Shown: positions 3,558 to 48,638 of the stretch, piece by piece | Layout of the letters: each line of letters opens with the position of its first letter | Position numbering within the stretch: position 1 is the stretch's first letter | NCBI RefSeq assembly: GCF_001194135.2 | Contig: NC_068995.1 | Location: 37,790,196 to 37,843,495, forward strand | From: Octopus bimaculoides | Lineage: Eukaryota | Length of the DNA: 53,300 bases | Direction of reading: 5' to 3' | Translations under genes and position numbers: made by a program | The notes under the pieces: generated by a model | The model's database searches: none | What the model saw: the letters and a program-made list of their open reading frames with translations, nothing else | Told to the model about the DNA's origin: nothing

Positions 3558-4531
3558 ATACGGAGACAAGGAGAAAAACACGGAGAAAAAAATTGAATAG
3601 TGTTCAGTCAACGGTCAATCATAATNNNNNNNNNNNNNNNNNNNNNNNNNNNNNNNNNNNNNNNNNNNNNNNNNNNNNNNNNNNNNNNNNNNNNNNNNNN
3701 NNNNNNNNNNNNNNNNNNNNNNNNNNNNNNNNNNNNNNNNNNNNNNNNNNNNNNNNNNNNNNNNNNNNNNNNNNNNNNNNNNNNNNNNNNNNNNNNNNNN
3801 NNNNNNNNNNNNNNNNNNNNNNNNNNNNNNNNNNNNNNNNNNNNNNNNNNNNNNNNNNNNNNNNNNNNNNNNNNNNNNNNNNNNNNNNNNNNNNNNNNNN
3901 NNNNNNNNNNNNNNNNNNNNNNNNNNNNNNNNNNNNNNNNNNNNNNNNNNNNNNNNNNNNNNNNNNNNNNNNNNNNNNNNNNNNNNNNNNNNNNNNNNNN
4001 NNNNNNNNNNNNNNNNNNNNNNNNNNNNNNNNNNNNNNNNNNNNNNNNNNNNNNNNNNNNNNNNNNNNNNNNNNNNNNNNNNNNNNNNNNNNNNNNNNNN
4101 NNNNNNNNNNNNNNNNNNNNNNNNNNNNNNNNNNNNNNNNNNNNNNNNNNNNNNNNNNNNNNNNNNNNNNNNNNNNNNNNNNNNNNNNNNNNNNNNNNNN
4201 NNNNNNNNNNNNNNNNNNNNNNNNNNNNNNNNNNNNNNNNNNNNNNNNNNNNNNNNNNNNNNNNNNNNNNNNNNNNNNNNNNNNNNNNNNNNNNNNNNNN
4301 NNNNNNNNNNNNNNNNNNNNNNNNNNNNNNNNNNNNNNNNNNNNNNNNNNNNNNNNNNNNNNNNNNNNNNNNNNNNNNNNNNNNNNNNNNNNNNNNNNNN
4401 NNNNNNNNNNNNNNNNNNNNNNNNNNNNNNNNNNNNNNNNNNNNNNNNNNNNNNNNNNNNNNNNNNNNNNNNNNNNNNNNNNNNNNNNNNNNNNNNNNNN
4501 NNNNNNNNNNNNNNNATATATATATATATAG

Positions 4532-11276: not shown

Positions 11277-12196
11277 CGAGGTGGTATTAAAAGCGTCCCG
11301 GACAACTTACGCTTAACAAAAAATAAGTCATTTACCTAAGTGTTGACATAATCTTCGAAATAGTCACCTTGCGAAGTAATACACCGGTCCCAGCGTTCCT
11401 ATCACTTTTGCAATCCGGCGTGGAAGTCGTTTTGCGTAAGCGAGTGCAGCACCTTCTGCGATTCGCTCTTGATTTCGACAACGAGGTTAAAACGGCGACT
11501 TTTGAGTTGCATTTTCATTTGAGGAAAGATGGATGTCTGCAGGTGCTATATCTGGCAAATAGGACTGATAGAGAAGCGTTGCCATGTTGTTCTTTGGCGG
11601 GAAACTCACGAGTGTGGAGAGCTCGGTAACAGGGTGCATTGTCCTCGTGAAGTTTCTAATTCTTAGCGCTCCACAGATCCGGTCGCTTTCACCGAATGTC
11701 CTCCCTCAAACTCTCTAAACATCGCAATAGAACCCTCGATTAACGGTCTGACTCGGGATGGGGGTGAATTCTCGATGCACAATGCTACATTTCTGTAGGT
11801 GACGCTCGTAGCAAGTTTTCCAGATCGCTCATCGCCTTCCAGGGATAGTCTGCTTTTGAAGTGCCCATGCCAAAGGAGACATTGCGTACGACCCATTGCT
11901 TTGTCGCCGTAAGCATGCCGAAGCATACTGAATGTCTCTGTAGCAGACTTCCTAAGTTTAACACAAAAATTCACGTTGCCTCTTTGTTTTCGTCCATAAC
12001 AAAGTCGTACACTACAGCATGCATGTGATAACCCCCCCCCCCCACAAATTCCGCAACTTTCGAAGTGAACACTACAATGTAACTCGCCAGGCTGCCTCAT
12101 TAACGTTACTGCCAGCTTTCACTGTGCACGCAACCGTGTGCTGCTATTACCTGGTACTCTACAGAACTAGTGCAGGAACTTTTTGATTCCACCTCG
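11277..12196 (-). mobile_element. Internally deleted mariner element with TIRs and TA target-site duplication
   Basis: TIRs cgaggtggtattaaaagcgtcccggac and the reverse complement of gtgcaggaactttttgattccacctcg, flanked by TA (11275-76, 12197-98). The N-terminus reads NVNFCVKLRKSATETFSMLRHAYG. The C-terminus has a YLPDIAPAD-like motif and ERWDRCITSQGDYFE. The catalytic centre is mostly missing. Confidence 0.88.
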
Positions 12197-13310: not shown

Positions 13311-14643
13311 AAATCCGTTGAAATTGGTAAACGTCTAGCTGAAAATGAATTGGAGACAACTTGATTGCGAAATCCCATAAGGAATCGGTTTATCGATTTT
13401 TTTCCACTCCTCAATTTTTGTTTTCCGTTTTTGGAGAACTTAAAGCATTCAAAGATCCCAGGAGACCTATGTAATGTTGGCATCAAGTTTGAATAAAATA
13501 CATCAAATTTGGTAAAAGTTATGGTTGNNNNNNNNNNNNNNNNNNNNNNNNNNNNNNNNNNNNNNNNNNNNNNNNNNNNNNNNNNNNNNNNNNNNNNNNN
13601 NNNNNNNNNNNNNNNNNNNNNNNNNNNNNNNNNNNNNNNNNNNNNNNNNNNNNNNNNNNNNNNNNNNNNNNNNNNNNNNNNNNNNNNNNNNNNNNNNNNN
13701 NNNNNNNNNNNNNNNNNNNNNNNNNNNNNNNNNNNNNNNNNNNNNNNNNNNNNNNNNNNNNNNNNNNNNNNNNNNNNNNNNNNNNNNNNNNNNNNNNNNN
13801 NNNNNNNNNNNNNNNNNNNNNNNNNNNNNNNNNNNNNNNNNNNNNNNNNNNNNNNNNNNNNNNNNNNNNNNNNNNNNNNNNNNNNNNNNNNNNNNNNNNN
13901 NNNNNNNNNNNNNNNNNNNNNNNNNNNNNNNNNNNNNNNNNNNNNNNNNNNNNNNNNNNNNNNNNNNNNNNNNNNNNNNNNNNNNNNNNNNNNNNNNNNN
14001 NNNNNNNNNNNNNNNNNNNNNNNNNNNNNNNNNNNNNNNNNNNNNNNNNNNNNNNNNNNNNNNNNNNNNNNNNNNNNNNNNNNNNNNNNNNNNNNNNNNN
14101 NNNNNNNNNNNNNNNNNNNNNNNNNNNNNNNNNNNNNNNNNNNNNNNNNNNNNNNNNNNNNNNNNNNNNNNNNNNNNNNNNNNNNNNNNNNNNNNNNNNN
14201 NNNNNNNNNNNNNNNNNNNNNNNNNNNNNNNNNNNNNNNNNNNNNNNNNNNNNNNNNNNNNNNNNNNNNNNNNNNNNNNNNNNNNNNNNNNNNNNNNNNN
14301 NNNNNNNNNNNNNNNNNNNNNNNNNNNNNNNNNNNNNNNNNNNNNNNNNNNNNNNNNNNNNNNNNNNNNNNNNNNNNNNNNNNNNNNNNNNNNNNNNNNN
14401 NNNNNNNNNNNNNNNNNNNNNNNNNNNNNNNNNNNNNNNNNNNNNNNNNNNNNNNNNNNNNNNNNNNNNNNNNNNNNNNNNNNNNNNNNNNNNNNNNNNN
14501 NNNNNNNNNNNNNNNNNNNCCTTTTATATATATACAGACATATATACATATATAGCGAGAGACAAGCATACACACACATATGTGTGTATATAGATATATA
14601 TCTATATATTTATATACATACATATATATTTAAATCCATATAA

Positions 14644-17637: not shown

Positions 17638-18169
17638 ATTGCCGAGTCACCTTGTTACTTCGTACATATTTGGCACCAAATAATTACTTCAATTTTTCCA
17701 TTTATAAACATTGCTACGTGAACGGATATCTATTTGGAATCGCAGTCGTATAAGTATTAAAGCTGACTTGCATAGATACTTCTAACGCAATTAAATGATT
17801 AAATATCCTTGTCTAATCAAGTGGAAAAATAATATTCTCATTTTAATAACCAATTTAACCCGAAAAAAAAAGCATCTTCATGAAATATTGTATATATCAA
17901 AACACATTTAAAAATAAGTGCTGCATTGTGGGATAACTCGTTGCTTACATAGTGCATTTAAAGTGAGATTTGTGTATTAAATGCATTCTATAAATCTGTA
18001 GTGTTCTCTCGAAAACTCTATATATCTTATTTCGTTTAGCAATGCTAAACTGTACAACAGTTATTTAGTTCAGCACAACGATTACAAAATTGATACAAAA
18101 AAAAATATTTACTGGGAAACATTAGCACAAGAATATACCAATATAAAACACTTGAAAATATTACAGAAA

Positions 18170-19369
18170 ATGATGCTCATGAAATATTTGACTTTTAGCT
18201 TGAGTTCAATTGTATTGATAGTAAATTCCAACCCAACGCATGAGGATGAAGAGCGATTGAAAAATACCTTGCTTTTGAATTATAGAAAAGATATAAGACC
18301 TGTTTTTAATCTGTATACAACTATTGATGTAAGTATTAACTTGACTCTTCACACACTGTATGACTTGGACTTCGTAAATAACTTACTGAAGGCTCGGTAT
18401 TTGATTTCAGCATGGTGGACTGATGAATATCTGACCTGGAATCCATTGGACTATAACAACATTGAACACATATATATACCAGAAAATCTTATATGGACGC
18501 CATCTCTGATGATGTGTAATTCAGTGAATGAGCAAGGTGATTCGAATATCAATCGCGAAGTATACGTTGACTATGAAGGAACAGTGTATTTGTGGTCTCT
18601 TAAGTACATAGAGACCTATTGCCAAGTCAACGCTTATACGTATCCATTTGATGTCCATTACTGCGGAATAGAAATGTGTGTTCCTTTACATTCTCCTAAC
18701 GAAACAAGAATACAAACAATCTATTACCGGAATATGAATTTTACAGAAAACTACAAGTGGGATATTCATTTCTCTGGTGAGGCAAATGGCAAAGTCGAAG
18801 AATTCAGTTATGCATTAGTGGGAATGAGGTTACGACGTAAACTCACCGTAGGAATCCTAGCTATGTTGATTCCGACAGTAATGATGACTATTTTAACTGT
18901 TTTTGTTTTTCTTCTGCCTCCTGAGTCAGGGGAGAAAGTCTCTTTAGCAACAACAATATTTTTATCAAACGTCTTGTATCTTGTTCAAATCGATAAGAAT
19001 ACACCAAAAAATTCGAAAAATCCTTCACTGCTTATCTTATATTTAATGTTATTGTCAATGTTAAGTGGTATCGTCACACTTGGATCTGTGGTTATAAGCA
19101 AGTTGCATGTTAATCAATCATCTCAAGAAAATAAAAACAAAACTCAAAATAACAAAGTTGCAGATGCTTCAATAATTTCCACGGTAAAATCACAAACTCT
19201 TCATGAAAAAGAACTTCAAAGTAAGAAAAAGAGAAACTGCATTTCCGATCACGAAAGACTGGATGCCATATTTCTAAAAATTGCCATCGTATTATTGGTT
19301 ATAATTTCAATAGTGTTTTTAGTTTTGTTATTTGAGTTTGATGACTTACAAGACCAACAATATTTATGA
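18170..19369 (+). CDS. Atypical nicotinic acetylcholine receptor-like Cys-loop subunit (cephalopod chemotactile receptor-like), copy 1; 399 aa, uninterrupted CDS
   Basis: First ATG at 18170 (the track start at 18152 is TTG). Signal peptide, RP(V) motif, WTD.YL.W, WTP, Cys-loop C-x13-C (CQVNAYTYPFDVHYC), pre-M1 LRRK, M1, PPESGEK-M2, M3, short intracellular loop, M4. No vicinal CC. Confidence 0.95.
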   Translation: MMLMKYLTFSLSSIVLIVNSNPTHEDEERLKNTLLLNYRKDIRPVFNLYTTIDVSINLTLHTLYDLDFVNNLLKARYLISAWWTDEYLTWNPLDYNNIEHIYIPENLIWTPSLMMCNSVNEQGDSNINREVYVDYEGTVYLWSLKYIETYCQVNAYTYPFDVHYCGIEMCVPLHSPNETRIQTIYYRNMNFTENYKWDIHFSGEANGKVEEFSYALVGMRLRRKLTVGILAMLIPTVMMTILTVFVFLLPPESGEKVSLATTIFLSNVLYLVQIDKNTPKNSKNPSLLILYLMLLSMLSGIVTLGSVVISKLHVNQSSQENKNKTQNNKVADASIISTVKSQTLHEKELQSKKKRNCISDHERLDAIFLKIAIVLLVIISIVFLVLLFEFDDLQDQQYL

Positions 19370-23384: not shown

Positions 23385-24371
23385 TATAAGGAGTTGCAAA
23401 TATAAGTAGACAATAAGTGGGAAAAATTAATATTTACTTAATCACTTCCCAACCAAGCTCCAATTACTAGCAAAAACGCGTGCGGTATAGTGATGTGGTG
23501 GAACACGATTCCTATACGATTTGCCAATTCTGGTTGTTTTCCTTTAATTGCATCCTCTAGTTTCAATAGCTGTTGACAGTAAACATCTGAGTTGATCGTT
23601 TGGTTCCTTGGAAGTAGCTCAAAATACACAACACTTTTGTAATCCCACCAAATTGACAACATTACCTTTTTGTTGAGGCAATTTAACTTCCGATGTGGTT
23701 TGTGCTGGTTCATTACGCGAGGACCATGATTGTCTTCGATTATTGCTATTGTAGACAACCCATTTCTCATCACCAGCGATGATTTGCTTAAAACAAGGTC
23801 GATTTCATTGCATTTGAGAAGCATATCGCAAATATTGATTCGTTGTGTTGAGTGAATCTCTTTATGTGGAACCCAAATATCGAGCTTCTTGATGAGTCCA
23901 AGTCATTTTAAGTGTTTTTCAACTGTTGTATGTGGTACATTTAACCTCTCTACAATCTCCCGTGCAGTTATATGACAATTAGATTCAATTGTGGCTTTGA
24001 TTCGGTCATTATCATCTTCTGTAGATCGTCCAGAGCGTTCTTCAACTTTCAGTGAAAAATCTCCAGAACGGAATTTTTGAAGTCATTTTTGACATGTACA
24101 TTCTGTTAAGCAATCAATATCATAAACTTCACATATATCTTTGTGAGCCTCAGCAGCAGTCTTGCCTTTATAGAAATAAAAAAAGCAAAATATGGCGAAC
24201 ATGTTCGTTTTTGCACCCTATGTTAAAATTTACACTGAAATAGCAGCTGTAAACAAAATTAGGCGCAGTTTGCTTCTAAAGTAAACTAAAATTGACAAAG
24301 CTTAAAAAAAAAAAAAAATTGTAACTCTATCCATTTGCGAAAATTAGAATTACTTCCTTGCCAACCTTATA
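23385..24371 (-). mobile_element. Decayed mariner element
   Basis: KKVMLSIWWDYKSVVYFELLPRNQTINSDVYCQQLLKLEDAIKGKQPELANRIGIVFHH. The ends resemble diverged TIRs (tataagg..ttg.caa). Confidence 0.85.
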
Positions 24372-25115
24372 TACATATATGTATATATATANNNNNNNNN
24401 NNNNNNNNNNNNNNNNNNNNNNNNNNNNNNNNNNNNNNNNNNNNNNNNNNNNNNNNNNNNNNNNNNNNNNNNNNNNNNNNNNNNNNNNNNNNNNNNNNNN
24501 NNNNNNNNNNNNNNNNNNNNNNNNNNNNNNNNNNNNNNNNNNNNNNNNNNNNNNNNNNNNNNNNNNNNNNNNNNNNNNNNNNNNNNNNNNNNNNNNNNNN
24601 NNNNNNNNNNNNNNNNNNNNNNNNNNNNNNNNNNNNNNNNNNNNNNNNNNNNNNNNNNNNNNNNNNNNNNNNNNNNNNNNNNNNNNNNNNNNNNNNNNNN
24701 NNNNNNNNNNNNNNNNNNNNNNNNNNNNNNNNNNNNNNNNNNNNNNNNNNNNNNNNNNNNNNNNNNNNNNNNNNNNNNNNNNNNNNNNNNNNNNNNNNNN
24801 NNNNNNNNNNNNNNNNNNNNNNNNNNNNNNNNNNNNNNNNNNNNNNNNNNNNNNNNNNNNNNNNNNNNNNNNNNNNNNNNNNNNNNNNNNNNNNNNNNNN
24901 NNNNNNNNNNNNNNNNNNNNNNNNNNNNNNNNNNNNNNNNNNNNNNNNNNNNNNNNNNNNNNNNNNNNNNNNNNNNNNNNNNNNNNNNNNNNNNNNNNNN
25001 NNNNNNNNNNNNNNNNNNNNNNNNNNNNNNNNNNNNNNNNNNNNNNNNNNNNNNNNNNNNNNNNNNNNNNNNNNNNNNNNNNNNNNNNNNNNNNNNNNNN
25101 NNNNNNNNNATATAT

Positions 25116-37752: not shown

Positions 37753-38418
37753 TATATATATATANNNNNNNNNNNNNNNNNNNNNNNNNNNNNNNNNNNN
37801 NNNNNNNNNNNNNNNNNNNNNNNNNNNNNNNNNNNNNNNNNNNNNNNNNNNNNNNNNNNNNNNNNNNNNNNNNNNNNNNNNNNNNNNNNNNNNNNNNNNN
37901 NNNNNNNNNNNNNNNNNNNNNNNNNNNNNNNNNNNNNNNNNNNNNNNNNNNNNNNNNNNNNNNNNNNNNNNNNNNNNNNNNNNNNNNNNNNNNNNNNNNN
38001 NNNNNNNNNNNNNNNNNNNNNNNNNNNNNNNNNNNNNNNNNNNNNNNNNNNNNNNNNNNNNNNNNNNNNNNNNNNNNNNNNNNNNNNNNNNNNNNNNNNN
38101 NNNNNNNNNNNNNNNNNNNNNNNNNNNNNNNNNNNNNNNNNNNNNNNNNNNNNNNNNNNNNNNNNNNNNNNNNNNNNNNNNNNNNNNNNNNNNNNNNNNN
38201 NNNNNNNNNNNNNNNNNNNNNNNNNNNNNNNNNNNNNNNNNNNNNNNNNNNNNNNNNNNNNNNNNNNNNNNNNNNNNNNNNNNNNNNNNNNNNNNNNNNN
38301 NNNNNNNNNNNNNNNNNNNNNNNNNNNNNNNNNNNNNNNNNNNNNNNNNNNNNNNNNNNNNNNNNNNNNNNNNNNNNNNNNNNNNNNNNNNNNNNNNNNN
38401 NNNNNNNNNNNNNNNNNN

Positions 38419-41160: not shown

Positions 41161-42440
41161 ATCAGGTCATTAACAATGAAATGTCCGATTTTCTAACGCA
41201 CGAGGTTTGACAGTCGTTAACCCTAATGTTTTACCCCGACAATTTTTTATTTGACAACATTGAAGAGTTACATTATCACTTTCCGAAATGCAATTCATGG
41301 TGTCTGATTATATTGTAAGTTTTCTCTTGTAAATCAATGTTTGTGAAACCATGAATAGATAAATAAAAATACAAATCGTGTTGTTTATGAATATGAGTTC
41401 CGTCGTGGAATCAATGCATCTGAGACAGCTCGAAGCATCAGTAAAGAAGATATGGCTAATGAGCACACTGTACGTCGAGGATTTGAGAAGATCCTGTCTG
41501 GTGACTTTACTCTTGAATATCAGTCCCGTCGCATACATGAGACGAAGTTGGGTAATGATGCGCTGGAAACTGTAGTGGAAGCGAATACATCTCAAACTAC
41601 ACGTGAATTAGCAGCAAGCTTTCGATTCCAACAGTATTGGACCATCTGAAACAAATCGGCAAGGTAAAGACGCTGGACAAGTAGGTACTACATGAACTGA
41701 ACTGAAGAAGCATCAAATGACACGTTGTCTTGAAACTTGATGCTCTTTGCTGTCACGACATAAGAGCAAACCATTTTTGTATCGTATTGTTGCGTGTGTT
41801 GAAAAATGAATTCTTTTCAACAATAGCAAACGTTCTGCACGGTGGGTGGATAGAGACGAAGTGCCAAATCACAATTCAAAAAAGAATATTCACCCCAAAA
41901 AGCTAATGGTGTCTGTTTGTTGGTCCAACGCTGGTGTCATACGGTACAGCTTCATGAGGCCTGGTATCTCAATTAGAAAAGATCTATACATCAACCAATT
42001 GGATGAAATGATAACTGAATTTACAATTAAACAACTGAGATTGGTCAATAGAGACAGGTCAGTTCTCTTGCAAGACCACATGTTGCAGAAAACAAAAACC
42101 GCTACTCAAATTACAGGAACTGAACTTGGAAGTAATCTGTCATCCACCATATTCACAAGACCTTGTACCAATGCACTATCACATTTGCCAAGCATCAGAC
42201 AGCATTTTGCTAGGAATAAACTTCAAATGTGAAGAAGATGCAAAAACCTCCTTTCGTGATTTCATCACCTCTTGCTCGCCAGAATTCCTCGCTGCTGGCA
42301 TACAAAACGCTAACGATAAAATGGCAAAATTGCGTTGATAATTTAGGTGTATACTTTGATTAAATGCATTTCTATTTGTTGAGATAAATTAAAATAAATT
42401 TCCAGTTCAAAATCAGACATTTCATACTTAATGACCTGAT
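41161..42440 (+). mobile_element. Full-size (~1.28 kb) but inactivated mariner element
   Basis: TIRs atcaggtcattaacaatgaaatgtccgatttt and the reverse complement of aaaatcagacatttcatacttaatgacctgat. Remnant motifs ACVEK*ILFNN, KKLMVSVCW, LLQDH and HPPYSQDLVP, with stops and frameshifts. Confidence 0.9.
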
Positions 42441-44704: not shown

Positions 44705-44905
44705 TTATTCTCCTTGTTTGCAGGAATCTTTGGTATGCCAGGCGAAGTGCTCAGAGGTATTTCGTCTGCCGCTACATTCTGAGTTCAAATTCCGCTGAGG
44801 TCGACTATGCCTTTCATCCTTTCGGGGTCGATAAGTTAAGTACCAGTTGAGTACCAGTGCAATGTGATCGATTTTCCCCCTCCCCACAAAATCCTGACCT
44901 TGTGT
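44705..44905 (+). mobile_element. Deu/Nin-like SINE, sister of 33429-33597
   Basis: Shares ggtatttcgtct.ccgctac.ttctgagttcaaatt and gcctttcatcctttcggggtcgataagttaagtaccagtt. Confidence 0.75.
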
Positions 44906-45015: not shown

Positions 45016-45633
45016 GTTGCTGAATCACCGAGATACCCTGTATATTTATGGCATCAAAACATTTCTTCATTTATATCAAAGAAGACAGTCTGATGTTGTG
45101 TTCAGTTTTGAGACTGGAATTATAATACCAGATATAGATATATATATATATATATATATATATTTGTACTTGTATCTAAAAAATATGAAATAGAAAATAA
45201 CTACTTATATAACAACATTCGAGGGAATATATAAATGGAAATAATTAAACAACTTTGACTCTTCAGATGGCAAATTACCTTCACATTTACACCTTATAAT
45301 TTAAAGGAATAAATTGACCAGAACATTTTTCATATAGGTATTATACATTGCAAAACACTTTTTGAAAAGAAATACCGAGCATTTTACGATAATTCATTGT
45401 TTGTATACTGCATTTAAAGTTGGTTTTATGCTCCTGTTGAATGATTCAGCTCTATCGTTATCTAGATAACTTCTAGTATATCATCTTGCATCAATAACAA
45501 AGTGAATAACGCTCATTTACGCAAAATTTAATATAAACATTACAATATTAAAACATATCGATATTTAATAGAAACAGTTATCACAAGAGTTGAGATAAAC
45601 TAATAGTTAACTCTCATTGAAATATAATTGATA

Positions 45634-46827
45634 ATGATGTCCATAACATATTTTGTTTTCAGTTTGACTTCGATTATTTTAATAGTAAAATCTAATCCGA
45701 CGCACGAGGATGAAAAACGATTGAAAGACAACCTGCTGTTGAATTACAGAAAAGATATAAGACCTGTTATTGATTTGTTTACTTCTGTCGATATATATAC
45801 TGATTTGGATCTTCATACACTCTATGATTTGGACTTTGTAAATAACATACTCAAGGCTCGGTATATGATTGGGTCATATTGGACCGACGCATATCTAATC
45901 TGGAAACCATCAGAATATAACAATATTACAGAAATAAATTTACCAAGACAGGAAATATGGACCCCATCTCTTATAATGTGTAATTCAGTGAATGAACCAG
46001 ATGATACGAATATCAATCAAGAAACCAAGATTTATTATGATGGAACTGTCGAGATGTGGTCACTTAAGTACATAGAGACCTATTGCCAAGTGAACGCTTA
46101 TACGTATCCATTTGATGAGCATAAGTGCGAAATACATATATGCGTTGCTGTACAATCTATTCGTCAAACGAGAATACAAAAAATGTATTACAAGAATCTA
46201 AATGTTACAGAAAACTACAAGTGGGATATCAATATGTTTGGAGTGGTATTTCAAGAAAATGATGCGGGCAGTCAGGCATCTGCGGTGATGTATCTACGAC
46301 GCAAACCTACAGTAGGAATCATAGCTATGCTGATTCCGACTGTAATGATGACTGTTTTAACCATTTTTGTATTTGTTCTGCCGCCTGAATCAGGAGAGAA
46401 AGTTTCTCTAGCTACGACAATATTTTTATCAAACGTTTTGTATCTTGTTGAAATCGATAAGAATACACCGAAAAATTCGAAATATCCGTCACTTCTCATG
46501 TTATATTTAATGTTATTGTCAATGTTAAGTGGTATGGTCACACTTGGATCGGTGGTTATAAGCAAGTTGTATGTTAATCGGTCATCCCGAGAAAAGAAAT
46601 CGACAGACCGAAAGAAAAACAAATCTCAAAGTAACAACATTGCAGATATTTCAATAATTTCCATGGTAAAATCTGAATCTCTTGAAGGGGAACTTCAAAG
46701 TAAGAAAAAGAGAAATTGTATCTCCGACTACATAAGACTGGATGCCATATTCTTAAAAATTGGGATTGTTATATCGATTATAATTTCAATATTATTTACC
46801 ACTTTGCTATTTACACCAATGGAGTAA
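45634..46827 (+). CDS. Atypical nicotinic acetylcholine receptor-like Cys-loop subunit (cephalopod chemotactile receptor-like), copy 2; 397 aa, uninterrupted CDS
   Basis: First ATG at 45634. Same architecture as copy 1, with Cys-loop CQVNAYTYPFDEHKC, PPESGEK-M2, four TM helices and no vicinal CC. It aligns without gaps to copy 1 through M3. Confidence 0.95.
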   Translation: MMSITYFVFSLTSIILIVKSNPTHEDEKRLKDNLLLNYRKDIRPVIDLFTSVDIYTDLDLHTLYDLDFVNNILKARYMIGSYWTDAYLIWKPSEYNNITEINLPRQEIWTPSLIMCNSVNEPDDTNINQETKIYYDGTVEMWSLKYIETYCQVNAYTYPFDEHKCEIHICVAVQSIRQTRIQKMYYKNLNVTENYKWDINMFGVVFQENDAGSQASAVMYLRRKPTVGIIAMLIPTVMMTVLTIFVFVLPPESGEKVSLATTIFLSNVLYLVEIDKNTPKNSKYPSLLMLYLMLLSMLSGMVTLGSVVISKLYVNRSSREKKSTDRKKNKSQSNNIADISIISMVKSESLEGELQSKKKRNCISDYIRLDAIFLKIGIVISIIISILFTTLLFTPME

Positions 46828-48638
46828 CAAGTTCAACAATATTTATTTCCAAATATTTCTCAGGAAACCCAGTATATTATCTGAGAAATGCTATGTTCGT
46901 TCAGGGGGAATAACAGAAAATTTAATGTTGGCTCAGTATTTCTTTAAAGATGGTGCACAAGAAATCTTTGGTCTTTAATCAAAAGTAATGATGGAGTGAA
47001 TTAATGTTTACGCAAATAATGCTGGAATTTGAATATCAAGAATGATGGCAAACATTTTCATAATTGAAGAATTGTACGACATTTCACATAAGATTTATTG
47101 GCGTAAAACAGACAATCTGATGAGCGATATCTATGAATTATATATTCAAGATTATTTCTCCGTTACAACAAATAGAAATGCATTGGGTTGTATGAAAGTG
47201 CACAAGCCTTTAATGAACTCATCTTCAGAATATGAAAGTGGTGTCGTAGAGAATCAACGATTATTACGCCTGCTGTTTTGAGATATCCTCCTTATGACAT
47301 TTTAAATAATTTCTTTGGTACTTATATGGACCAAAGCATAACATCTAGTATATAAAAAATATCTCTGTGTATCCAGGTACAACTACATTTTGATGAATAT
47401 ATTTATATATATATATATATATNNNNNNNNNNNNNNNNNNNNNNNNNNNNNNNNNNNNNNNNNNNNNNNNNNNNNNNNNNNNNNNNNNNNNNNNNNNNNN
47501 NNNNNNNNNNNNNNNNNNNNNNNNNNNNNNNNNNNNNNNNNNNNNNNNNNNNNNNNNNNNNNNNNNNNNNNNNNNNNNNNNNNNNNNNNNNNNNNNNNNN
47601 NNNNNNNNNNNNNNNNNNNNNNNNNNNNNNNNNNNNNNNNNNNNNNNNNNNNNNNNNNNNNNNNNNNNNNNNNNNNNNNNNNNNNNNNNNNNNNNNNNNN
47701 NNNNNNNNNNNNNNNNNNNNNNNNNNNNNNNNNNNNNNNNNNNNNNNNNNNNNNNNNNNNNNNNNNNNNNNNNNNNNNNNNNNNNNNNNNNNNNNNNNNN
47801 NNNNNNNNNNNNNNNNNNNNNNNNNNNNNNNNNNNNNNNNNNNNNNNNNNNNNNNNNNNNNNNNNNNNNNNNNNNNNNNNNNNNNNNNNNNNNNNNNNNN
47901 NNNNNNNNNNNNNNNNNNNNNNNNNNNNNNNNNNNNNNNNNNNNNNNNNNNNGATCTATATATAATAACCCATTCGCCCCTACAAGTGATCCTTATATGT
48001 AGCCAAGGGAAGTACACCATTCATTTTCCTAAGTCATTTGGCAAAAGTGAAATTGAATAACATTATTTTTTAGTATTTGAACTGTTAGAATTATATTCTC
48101 AGTTTATACAGCAGAACACTCAAACAAGTAAATAGTATTTTCCTAAACAATAGATCCACTTATTCCGGTTTTTGTGTTATTCACAAATAGACCAACACTA
48201 GCGCCACTGAAGGTAATATTCTCTGAGAACGCACAGAGTTATTTACTTTGAATTGTTATTATCTCATATCTGATTAGCCTGTTATTACATAGCATGCTTC
48301 ACGATTTTAGTATACATGCCTTATTAGTATTTCCTCCTAAGCTCTATATACTCTGGGAAAGCATTAACACCTTTTATCGGGGCTACATAATTTTAATACT
48401 TACTATCGGGTAACTAATTTCATATCATTGCATAACTGATTTTATAATTTGGGTATTCCTAACTTATTAGCAATTCCTAAAACCAAGATCCTGCGAAAGG
48501 TAGTCCGGTATTCTCTGTAAATGCACAAAAAACTGTTTTAAAGGCTACATACTTTGTATTGTTATTATTGGATTGGCGAGAACAGAACCAAGGGATAAGC
48601 TCCGCCATCTCGGGAATTACTGTGTACGTGAGCAAGTG

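What the first reader, a model, noticed from the sequence alone, without database searches (positions are those of the whole stretch)
18770..18829. Divergence between the paralogues is concentrated on ligand-pocket loops while the pore is nearly fixed
Manual gap-free alignment gives M1-M3 80/90 identical (89%) and mature ectodomain 129/204 (63%). Loop C (residues 201-220; copy 2 at 46234-46293) is only 4/20: FSGEANGKVEEFSYALVGMR versus MFGVVFQENDAGSQASAVMY. Beta1 (3/10), the loop E region (4/10) and post-loop B (4/10) are also hypervariable, beside invariant blocks such as HTLYDLDFVN and WSLKYIETYCQVNAYTYPFD. This pattern is expected from diversifying selection on ligand specificity (inference).
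Basis: partly seen in the sequence, partly recalled or inferred. Interest (0 to 1): 0.7.

Follow-up and report, generated by a model that had tools for sequence, protein, structure and literature searches.

The report
Octopus chemotactile receptor paralogues, fast-evolving pocket
The two genes are neighbouring "taste-by-touch" chemotactile receptor genes of the California two-spot octopus; their ligand-binding loops evolve fast under positive selection while the ion pore is held constant, which is real but already published for this receptor family.

Summary
Two intronless Cys-loop receptor genes (A 18170-19369, B 45634-46827, + strand) are 129/204 identical in the ectodomain, 80/90 in M1-M3 and 4/20 in the loop C hairpin. 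This clustering is non-random (scan-statistic p=0.004).

They belong to the Octopus bimaculoides chemotactile receptor (CR) tandem cluster and are about 60% identical to CRT1 (PDB 8EIS/9E6B).

- M1-M3 is under strong purifying selection (omega 0.14) with a normal synonymous rate, so gene conversion does not explain it.
- Site-class tests find a class with omega>1 (M7/M8 LRT 52; 32 on the ectodomain alone; 20 in the A/B subclade).
- Those sites lie in beta1, beta2, loop E, loop F and loop C, with none in the membrane helices.
- They are enriched in the 15 published CRT1 ligand-contact residues (p=0.0008).

Nuance: taken as a block over the whole family, loop C has omega about 0.7-1. The acceleration is specific to the A/B/P2 subclade, and CRT1 orthologues conserve loop C.

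This conclusion was already published (Allard et al. 2023 and later MEME/FEL work), so it is a correct rediscovery. Two side observations may be new: copy A is a recombinant, and its ectodomain evolved faster afterwards.

The parts
18170..19369 (+). Copy A: intronless chemotactile receptor (CR) gene, 399 aa plus stop
   Evidence: Intact ORF. Pfam Neur_chan_LBD and Neur_chan_memb. CRT1 (9E6B/8EIS) is the best PDB match, E=5e-142. Located at O. bimaculoides CM046615.1:37,808,365.
45634..46827 (+). Copy B: intronless CR gene, 397 aa plus stop; the NCBI model P0005 adds an upstream N-terminal extension
   Evidence: CRT1 is the best PDB match, E=3e-147.
18770..18829 (+). Copy A beta9 / loop C / beta10 hairpin (the finding); corresponds to CRT1 residues 181-200
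   Evidence: 4/20 identical to copy B. Sites with P(omega>1)>0.95 at CRT1 positions 184, 190 and 191. Against copy P2, dN is 0.46 and dS 0.055.
46234..46293 (+). Copy B beta9 / loop C / beta10 hairpin
   Evidence: The alignment is gap-free in the six-gene subclade.
18230..18841 (+). Copy A mature ectodomain (A residues 21-224)
   Evidence: 129/204 identical to B. Omega is 0.47 both for the A-B pair and family-wide. It holds 16 of the 19 sites with P(omega>1)>0.8.
18320..18349 (+). Copy A beta1 strand (TIDVSINLTL); contains the equivalents of pocket residues CRT1 L37 and Y39
   Evidence: 3/10 identical to B. CRT1 positions 35/37/39 have P(omega>1) of 0.86-0.92.
18620..18664 (+). Copy A Cys-loop (C-x13-C), inside the invariant 20-residue block
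   Evidence: The sequence reads CQVNAYTYPFDVHYC. The block WSLKYIETYCQVNAYTYPFD is 20/20 identical to B.
18848..19117 (+). Copy A M1-M3 channel core (A residues 227-316); M2 is at 18932-18997
   Evidence: 80/90 identical to B. Omega is 0.13-0.14 with dS 0.35 and a family synonymous rate of 0.87. No site has P(omega>1)>0.5. M2 is nearly invariant in all 14 genes.
46312..46581 (+). Copy B M1-M3 channel core
   Evidence: Same alignment columns as in copy A.
17886..19367 (+). Duplicated unit, copy A side (about 285 bp of 5' flank plus the CDS)
   Evidence: blastn gives 75% identity over 1525 nt to 45339-46846. No other homology is found between the two neighbourhoods apart from one 39-nt match.
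45339..46846 (+). Duplicated unit, copy B side

Best explanation
Copies A and B are two members of the tandem, intronless chemotactile receptor (CR) gene cluster of Octopus bimaculoides. CRs are pentameric Cys-loop cation channels derived from nicotinic receptors. They sit in sucker sensory cells and are gated by poorly soluble molecules instead of acetylcholine.

After duplication, the gating and permeation machinery (Cys-loop, pre-M1, M1-M3) stayed under strong purifying selection, so every paralogue remains a working channel that can co-assemble with others. Residues lining the inter-subunit ligand pocket were repeatedly replaced under positive selection, which retunes ligand specificity. 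These residues lie on beta1, beta2, loop E, loop F and above all loop C.

Shown here: family membership, the divergence pattern, purifying selection on the pore, a class of sites with omega>1, and its overlap with published CRT1 ligand contacts.

Inferred: that the substitutions change ligand specificity in A and B, and that both genes are expressed in suckers.
For: Family identity:
- Pfam domains.
- CRT1 is the best solved-structure match at about 60% identity, E around 1e-142 to 1e-147, against about 1e-31 for alpha7 and 5-HT3A.
- The window lies in O. bimaculoides CM046615.1, and further CR genes follow on the same strand at +42, +81, +175 and +239 kb.
- The canonical loop B Trp aligns to Ala in B and Pro in A. 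Loop C has no vicinal Cys pair.

Pore under constraint, not homogenised:
- M1-M3 omega is 0.13 with dS 0.35 for A-B.
- Family-wide, omega is 0.14 with a synonymous rate of 0.87.
- 49 of 90 codons are individually under purifying selection, and none is positive.

Positive selection:
- M1a/M2a LRT 37.3 and M7/M8 LRT 52.2.
- The tests remain significant on the ectodomain with its own tree (23.8 and 32.3).
- They remain significant in the unsaturated six-gene subclade (17.3 and 20.0, about 7-8% of sites at omega 4-5).
- The null simulations are well calibrated.

Location of the selected sites:
- They are enriched in the 15 published CRT1 contact residues: 7/15 versus 19/189, p=0.0008.
- A-B differences are enriched there too: 10/15 versus 65/189, p=0.015.
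- Loop C holds 7 of 20 sites with P>0.5, against 19 of 184 in the rest of the ectodomain (p=0.006).
- For A versus P2, loop C dN is 0.46 against an ectodomain dS of 0.156 (Fisher p=0.004).
- CRT1 position 192 carries six different residues in the six subclade genes, each one nucleotide apart.

Literature: site models and MEME already place positively selected CR sites in the pocket, including Y39, L191, W122 and F192 (PMC11526382; bioRxiv 10.1101/2025.10.28.685082; 10.1101/2025.03.03.641191).
Against: - As a block, loop C has a family-wide omega of 0.74 (p=0.15 against 1), and its tip has 1.01. In the subclade the value is 1.72 (p=0.14). Only a post-hoc 13-codon core reaches 2.84 (p=0.03).
- The A-B pair alone is not significant.
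- Per-site FEL-style tests on 14 sequences find no individually significant loop C codon.
- Loop C is conserved between CRT1 orthologues (omega 0.2) and between P11 and P14 (0.5).
- Recombination exists in this family and can inflate site-model tests.
- I used neighbour-joining topologies, naive empirical Bayes posteriors and my own code, on 14 genes out of the 235 used in the published analysis.
- Pocket mapping rests on the published CRT1 contact list and not on measured distances in a model of A or B.
- No expression or ligand data exist for A or B.
Confidence: 0.85

Rival explanations
1. Relaxed constraint only. The variable loops are solvent-exposed and simply drift at the neutral rate, while the membrane core is constrained. 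No adaptive retuning of ligand specificity is involved.
For: Loop C block omega is 0.74 family-wide and 1.01 at the tip, neither distinguishable from 1. A-B loop C omega is 1.5 and not significant. No loop C codon is individually significant in the FEL-style test. Some candidate sites lie in the intracellular loop (CRT1 327, 332), where drift is plausible.
Against: M2a and M8 fit significantly better than nulls that already include a neutral class, in three data sets, with calibrated nulls. For A versus P2, loop C dN is 3 times the ectodomain dS (p=0.004). The same loop is under purifying selection in CRT1 orthologues (omega 0.2), so it is not intrinsically unconstrained. Candidate sites coincide with experimentally validated ligand contacts.
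Confidence: 0.1
2. Concerted evolution artefact. Gene conversion between tandem paralogues homogenises the transmembrane half, so the pore only looks fixed. Patchy conversion tracts from other paralogues create the apparently hypervariable loops.
For: Copy A is demonstrably mosaic. Its ectodomain and M1-M3 are nearest P2/P3, while its intracellular loop and M4 group with P4 (29:1:0 informative sites, a shared 8-codon deletion, max-chi-square permutation p<0.0005). Synonymous divergence between A and B dips to about 0.16-0.17 around M3 and the start of the intracellular loop. Copy A's beta10 motif FSYAL resembles the distant CRT1 clade.
Against: M1-M3 synonymous divergence is substantial (A-B dS 0.35 against 0.52 in the ectodomain; family synonymous rate 0.87), while omega is 0.14. 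The conservation is therefore at the protein level. M2 is nearly invariant even between species and between paralogues only 50% identical overall. Copy A's loop C codons differ from its own clade by single nucleotides and share that clade's synonymous context, unlike the CRT1 type. The selection tests survive restriction to the ectodomain with its own tree.
Confidence: 0.04
3. Alignment artefact. Loop C contains unrecognised indels, so non-homologous residues are being compared.
For: Two distant paralogues (P10, P18) have a 4-residue deletion in loop C.
Against: All six genes of the A/B subclade have the same loop C length, bracketed by the invariant KWDI and LRRK anchors. The first 8 codons of A and P2 are nearly identical at the DNA level.
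Confidence: 0.01

Closest known systems
Octopus chemotactile receptor CRT1 (PDB 8EIS, 9E6B-D, 9YI4) and the O. bimaculoides CR family of about 26 genes
   Same: Copies A and B are about 60% identical to CRT1 over the full length. They have the same length, signal peptide, Cys-loop, near-identical M1-M3 and MA/M4 layout. They are intronless and lie in the same chromosomal cluster. They have also lost the acetylcholine-binding determinants. The pattern of a variable pocket and a conserved channel, with positively selected pocket sites (Y39, L191, F192 and others), matches what is published for the family.
   Different: A and B are uncharacterised paralogues from a different subclade than CRT1. 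Ten of the 15 CRT1 ligand-contact positions differ between A and B, and the CRT1 contacts L37, Y39, Y58 and L191 are replaced in both copies (F192 in B only). In this subclade loop C evolves fast, whereas CRT1 orthologues conserve it (omega 0.2). Their ligands are unknown.
Squid chemotactile receptor CRB1 (PDB 8EIZ)
   Same: The same CR branch of nicotinic-like receptors, with a recognisable full-length match (E about 1e-41 to 1e-43).
   Different: Much more distant. CRB1 responds to bitter tastants, and the octopus-specific expansion is absent in squid (6-7 genes).
Alpha7 nicotinic acetylcholine and 5-HT3A receptors
   Same: The same pentameric Cys-loop fold and topology, with the orthosteric site at the subunit interface formed by loops A-F. 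These are the ancestral scaffold.
   Different: The loop B tryptophan is replaced (Ala in B, Pro in A), there is no loop C Cys-Cys, and the loop D aromatic is replaced by Leu (A) or Met (B). Neurotransmitter receptors have conserved binding sites, whereas the CR pocket diversifies.
Other tandemly expanded chemoreceptor families with positively selected binding sites (vertebrate V1R/T2R/OR, insect IR/GR)
   Same: The same evolutionary mode: birth-and-death tandem arrays, often intronless, with adaptive change concentrated in ligand-contact positions and a conserved signalling core.
   Different: Unrelated folds and signalling mechanisms.

Membership tests
Cephalopod chemotactile receptors (CR) | Cys-loop pentameric ligand-gated channel architecture: ligand-binding domain, C-x13-C loop, four transmembrane helices | tested here: met
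   Pfam PF02931 and PF02932 in both copies. The Cys-loop CQVNAYTYPFD(V/E)H(Y/K)C and M1-M4 are visible in the alignment to CRT1.
Cephalopod chemotactile receptors (CR) | Closer to characterised CRs than to any neurotransmitter-gated receptor | tested here: met
   CRT1 E=5e-142 (A) and 3e-147 (B), squid CRB1 about 1e-41 to 1e-43, alpha7 and 5-HT3A about 1e-31 to 1e-33. Both copies nest among octopus CR genes in the tree.
Cephalopod chemotactile receptors (CR) | Loss of canonical acetylcholine-binding determinants (loop B Trp, loop C vicinal Cys pair) | tested here: met
   In the HMMER alignment to 5-HT3A, the loop B Trp aligns to Ala in copy B, and the same column is Pro in copy A. There is no Cys in either loop C.
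Cephalopod chemotactile receptors (CR) | Intronless gene within the tandem cluster on one O. bimaculoides chromosome | tested here: met
   Both are single uninterrupted ORFs. Five further CR genes lie on CM046615.1 between 37.81 and 38.05 Mb on the same strand. A cluster of 26 genes is reported in PMC9068888, and the intronless structure in PMC11526382 and PMC13174522.
Cephalopod chemotactile receptors (CR) | Expression in sucker chemosensory epithelium | not testable with these tools
Cephalopod chemotactile receptors (CR) | Gated by poorly soluble hydrophobic ligands and not by acetylcholine | not testable with these tools
   This needs heterologous expression and a ligand screen.
Gene family under diversifying selection at the ligand pocket | A class of codons with omega>1 supported by likelihood-ratio tests | tested here: met
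   M1a/M2a and M7/M8 are significant in three data sets. The null simulations are calibrated.
Gene family under diversifying selection at the ligand pocket | Selected codons map to ligand-contact residues | tested here: met
   7 of the 15 published CRT1 contact residues against 19 of 189 other ectodomain residues, p=0.0008. Mapping is by alignment to CRT1, not by measured distances.
Gene family under diversifying selection at the ligand pocket | Signal robust to recombination among paralogues | tested here: inconclusive
   The signal survives restriction to the ectodomain with its own tree and to the subclade. No formal breakpoint-partitioned analysis such as GARD could be run, and recombination is present.

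The most novel reading that the evidence does not exclude
Diversification of the CR cluster is driven by two coupled processes. Recombination or gene conversion between tandem paralogues puts a ligand-binding and channel module onto a different intracellular-loop/M4 module, with a breakpoint near the end of M3. A lineage-specific burst of adaptive substitutions in beta1 and loop C then follows. Copy A would be a caught-in-the-act example. Its C-terminal third is orthologous to P4 of another octopus species, while its ectodomain is nearest its neighbour P2. Since then its ectodomain has evolved at omega about 1, with 24 changes against 9 on the P2 branch and a loop C dN/dS of 3-8. I found no report of gene conversion or domain shuffling in CRs in the searchable library.
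Probability: 0.35. Interest if true: 0.45.

Novelty: already known. Interest (0 to 1): 0.22.

Why it matters
CRs are a textbook-quality case of a neurotransmitter receptor turned into an environmental chemosensor. The split between a frozen channel core and an adaptively evolving pocket explains how about 26 paralogues can widen the octopus's "taste-by-touch" repertoire while remaining able to co-assemble. Cryo-EM, MEME/FEL and mutagenesis have already established that for the family, so this finding adds only two more uncharacterised paralogues that follow the rule. The modest added value lies elsewhere. Loop C acceleration is subclade-specific, and copy A looks like a recent recombinant with an accelerated ectodomain. 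That makes A, B and P2 good natural material for experiments on ligand specificity.

Tried and rejected
- **Gene conversion as the cause of pore identity:** rejected. M1-M3 dS is 0.35 and the family synonymous rate is 0.87.
- **A CRT1-like conversion tract as the source of copy A's FSYAL motif:** rejected. The codons differ from A's own clade by single nucleotides, and the synonymous context matches that clade. A micro-conversion of about 8 nt cannot be excluded.
- **FEL-style per-site tests:** underpowered with 14 sequences, giving 6 sites at p<0.1, fewer than expected by chance. One result, A residue 138, has an implausibly high LRT for its rates, probably because the null fit stopped at a local optimum. 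I did not rely on these tests.
- **First FEL run:** timed out and was rewritten.
- **Quartet analysis in the ectodomain:** unresolved at 10:8:8. The placement of A as sister to P2_Obim in the ectodomain tree is therefore weak. Only the C-terminal A+P4 grouping is strong.
- **Pfam on the upstream exon of the NCBI copy-B model:** no match. Its transposon origin is inferred only from the adjacent mariner fragment.
- **Primary papers:** Allard 2023, Kang 2023, van Giesen 2020 and the Current Biology primer are not held. Their content is cited through the review PMC11526382 and two later preprints.
- **Other scans:** no tRNA genes in the window and no third CR copy or fragment.
- **Not done:** a structure prediction, because a 60%-identical solved structure exists and the tools return no coordinates for measuring distances.

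Full report
**What is there**

The window is AT-rich eukaryotic DNA with microsatellites and 17 masked N-runs. It contains exactly two Cys-loop receptor genes, both single uninterrupted ORFs on the + strand. Copy A runs from 18170 to 19369 (399 aa from the first ATG). Copy B runs from 45634 to 46827 (397 aa). A tblastn scan finds no third copy or fragment. Both copies carry the Pfam ligand-binding and transmembrane domains of neurotransmitter-gated channels.

The best solved-structure matches are the octopus chemotactile receptor CRT1 (9E6B, 8EIS), at E=5e-142 for A and 3e-147 for B and about 60% identity over the full length. Next come squid CRB1 at about 1e-41 to 1e-43, then alpha7 nicotinic and 5-HT3A receptors at about 1e-31 to 1e-33.

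Copy A maps to Octopus bimaculoides assembly GCA_001194135.2, chromosome record CM046615.1, at 37,808,365. Further CR genes follow on the same strand:
- P0002, about 7 kb beyond the window's end;
- P0010 at 37.889 Mb;
- P0016 at 37.983 Mb;
- P0011 at 38.048 Mb.

[quoted passage not shown] The intronless structure is a known hallmark of the family (PMC11526382, PMC13174522).

The canonical loop B tryptophan aligns to Ala in B and Pro in A, and loop C has no Cys pair. As expected for CRs, neither copy looks like an acetylcholine binder.

The duplicated unit shared by A and B is short. It runs from about 285 bp upstream of the ATG to the stop codon, at 75% nucleotide identity.

**Checking the observation**

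- The two coordinate ranges translate to the quoted peptides.
- The ectodomain is 129/204 identical, M1-M3 80/90, and the loop C segment 4/20.
- The beta1, loop E and post-loop B decamers are 3/10, 4/10 and 4/10, and the two invariant blocks are 10/10 and 20/20.

The heterogeneity is not chance:
- ectodomain versus M1-M3 identity, p=3e-6;
- loop C versus the rest of the ectodomain, p=4e-5;
- a 20-residue window this divergent anywhere in a shuffled ectodomain, p=0.004.

The segment spans the end of beta9, the loop C tip and beta10, and corresponds to CRT1 residues 181-200.

**Is the pore conserved by selection or by gene conversion?**

Nei-Gojobori estimates for A versus B give dS 0.35 and omega 0.13-0.14 in M1-M3, against dS 0.52 and omega 0.47 in the ectodomain.

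I assembled coding DNA for 14 family members: six from O. bimaculoides, one from O. vulgaris, two from O. sinensis, and five from an unnamed octopus in SRA runs SRR118693xx. I fitted Goldman-Yang type codon models with my own code. The family-wide values are omega 0.40 and kappa 2.25.

With branch lengths fixed, M1-M3 has a synonymous rate of 0.87 and omega 0.14. The ectodomain has omega 0.47, the intracellular loop 0.49 and M4 0.46. The channel core therefore accumulates silent changes at a normal rate and rejects amino-acid changes, which is purifying selection and not homogenisation. M2 is almost invariant across all 14 genes, including pairs that are only 50% identical overall.

**Is the pocket under positive selection?**

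Taken as a 20-codon block over the whole family, loop C has omega 0.74 (p=0.15 against 1), and its tip has 1.01. The A-B pair alone gives 1.5 on about 12 synonymous sites. Block-level evidence therefore does not exceed neutrality. FEL-style per-site tests on 14 sequences lack power.

| Data set | M1a vs M2a LRT | M7 vs M8 LRT | Selected class |
|---|---|---|---|
| All 14 genes, full length | 37.3 (p=8e-9) | 52.2 (p=5e-12) | 5.7% at omega 2.9 (M2a); 9.3% at omega 2.0 (M8) |
| Ectodomain only, own tree | 23.8 | 32.3 | same sites |
| Six-gene A/B subclade (synonymous tree length 0.9 per codon) | 17.3 | 20.0 | 7-8% at omega 4-5 |

I repeated the tests on the ectodomain alone because the family shows recombination (see below). 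In forty simulations under the M1a null on the subclade tree, 5% exceeded the nominal 5% threshold and the maximum was 10.1. The code is therefore calibrated, and the observed value exceeds every simulation.

**Where the selected sites are**

Sites with posterior above 0.8 under M8, in CRT1 numbering (copy A residue minus 20), are:
- 35, 37, 39: alternate residues of beta1;
- 60, 62, 64: alternate residues of beta2, on the same face as pocket residue Y58;
- 69;
- 109, 112, 118: loop E region;
- 157;
- 165, 167: loop F;
- 184, 190, 191, plus 188 and 192 in the ectodomain-only run: loop C;
- 327 and 332 in the intracellular loop, and one in the C-terminal tail.

None lies in M1-M3 or M4.

The published mutagenesis set of CRT1 ligand-coordinating residues is L37, Y39, Y58, W122, F124, C150, V151, A152, L153, E167, D168, S169, E190, L191 and F192. 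Against that set:
- candidate sites are enriched: 7/15 versus 19/189 of other ectodomain residues (p=0.0008);
- A-B differences are enriched: 10/15 versus 65/189 (p=0.015).

The inner pocket (C150-L153, F124, D168) is conserved in my analysis, as in the published FEL result. The outer pocket (Y39, E167, E190-F192) is variable, as in the published MEME result.

**Lineage specificity**

Loop C dN/dS differs sharply between lineages.

| Pair | Loop C omega |
|---|---|
| A vs P2 | 3-8 (Fisher p=0.004 against the ectodomain synonymous rate) |
| P2 vs its O. vulgaris orthologue P3 | about 2 |
| B vs P6 | 1-4 |
| A vs B | 1.5-1.7 |
| CRT1 orthologues (P7 vs P8) | 0.2 |
| P11 vs P14 | 0.5 |

This explains the block value near 1 over the whole family. 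It also argues against loop C being intrinsically unconstrained. The CRT1 F192 position carries F, G, S, I, C and D in the six subclade genes, each one nucleotide apart.

**Recombination**

Copy A is mosaic. Up to about residue 306 it matches P2 rather than P4 at 117 of 160 discriminating sites. Beyond that point it matches P4 at 46 of 73 (max chi-square 27.7, permutation p<0.0005). In the intracellular loop and M4, 29 informative sites group A with P4 against 1 and 0 for the alternatives, and A and P4 share an 8-codon deletion.

In the ectodomain the A/P2/P3/P4 quartet is unresolved (10:8:8), so which half was exchanged remains open.

Since then the A lineage has accumulated 24 ectodomain amino-acid changes against 9 on the P2 branch (p=0.014). 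Eight of the 24 are in the loop C segment and six in or next to beta1.

Copy A's beta10 motif FSYAL looks like the CRT1 type, but its codons are single-nucleotide derivatives of its own clade's codons. I therefore read it as point substitution and not as a conversion tract.

A full-text search for gene conversion together with chemotactile receptors returned only the review, where the phrase occurs once, most likely in an unrelated reference title.

**Comparison with what is known, and verdict**

The review PMC11526382 states that site models of octopus CRs found numerous positively selected sites. [quoted passage not shown] 2023. Two later preprints add MEME/FEL on up to 235 CRs and mutagenesis of the same residues.

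The conclusion is already in the literature. The two genes are ordinary, apparently intact members of a known family that follow the known rule. Interest is therefore low. There is a modest upside from the subclade-specific loop C acceleration and from the recombinant history of copy A.

**Caveats**

- The trees are neighbour-joining trees.
- Posteriors are naive, not Bayes, empirical Bayes.
- Codon frequencies are F3x4.
- Only 14 genes were used.
- Pocket mapping is by alignment to CRT1, not by measured distances.
- There are no expression or functional data for A or B.

Noticed in passing
window 18170-19369 (breakpoint about 19085-19099), compared with L002, L003 and L004: Copy A is a recombinant. 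Its signal peptide, ectodomain and M1-M3 are nearest P2_Obim/P3_Ovul. Its intracellular loop and M4 group with P4 of another octopus species (29:1:0 informative sites, a shared 8-codon deletion, max-chi-square permutation p<0.0005). The ectodomain quartet is unresolved, so the direction of exchange is unknown.
   Followed up: partly
window 18230-18841 versus L002:10022-10633: The copy A lineage is accelerated in the ectodomain: 24 amino-acid changes against 9 on the P2 branch (p=0.014), and A-P2 ectodomain omega is 0.98. Eight of the 24 changes are in the loop C segment and six in or near beta1.
   Followed up: partly
window 18986-18988 (A, Gln) and 46450-46452 (B, Glu): The only M2 difference between A and B is a Q/E switch near the extracellular end of M2 (about position 17', CRT1 Q253). 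The same Q/E dimorphism recurs independently in the P11/P14 clade. It adds a ring of charge at the outer pore mouth and could tune ion permeation.
   Followed up: no
window 41452-41634 and 44722-44754 (+), next to 41810-42229 (+): The NCBI protein model for copy B (459 aa) adds an N-terminal extension encoded about 4 kb upstream. That exon lies 176 bp upstream of a decayed mariner transposase fragment (Pfam Transposase_1, E=2e-19) on the same strand, and itself has no Pfam match. The intronless ORF with its own signal peptide looks like the real gene. The NCBI models of P0002, P0010 and P0016 are conversely truncated at the N-terminus relative to the genomic ORFs.
   Followed up: partly
window 23441-23902 (-), 11666-12118 (-): Further decayed mariner-type transposase fragments (Transposase_1 E=2e-21; HTH_48 E=6.5e-6) lie between and around the receptor genes. 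Such repeats could provide substrates for unequal crossing-over in the cluster.
   Followed up: no
window 17886-18169 and 45339-45633: About 285 bp of 5' flank is still alignable between A and B within a 75%-identical duplicated unit, and nothing beyond it is alignable. This is a candidate shared core promoter or 5' UTR for CR genes.
   Followed up: no
window-wide, e.g. 3626-4515, 13528-14519, 24392-25109, 37765-38418: There are 17 runs of N (10-992 nt), most flanked by TA- or CA-rich microsatellites. These are assembly gaps or masked simple repeats. The long ORFs that run through them are artefacts.
   Followed up: no
loci L004-L007, L009, L010, L013, L014 (SRA runs SRR11869384-94): An unnamed octopus species in these SRA runs carries clear orthologues of B, CRT1, P10 and P11. 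Its synonymous distances place it closer to O. sinensis (dS 0.24) than to O. bimaculoides (0.38-0.48). The species could not be identified with the tools.
   Followed up: no
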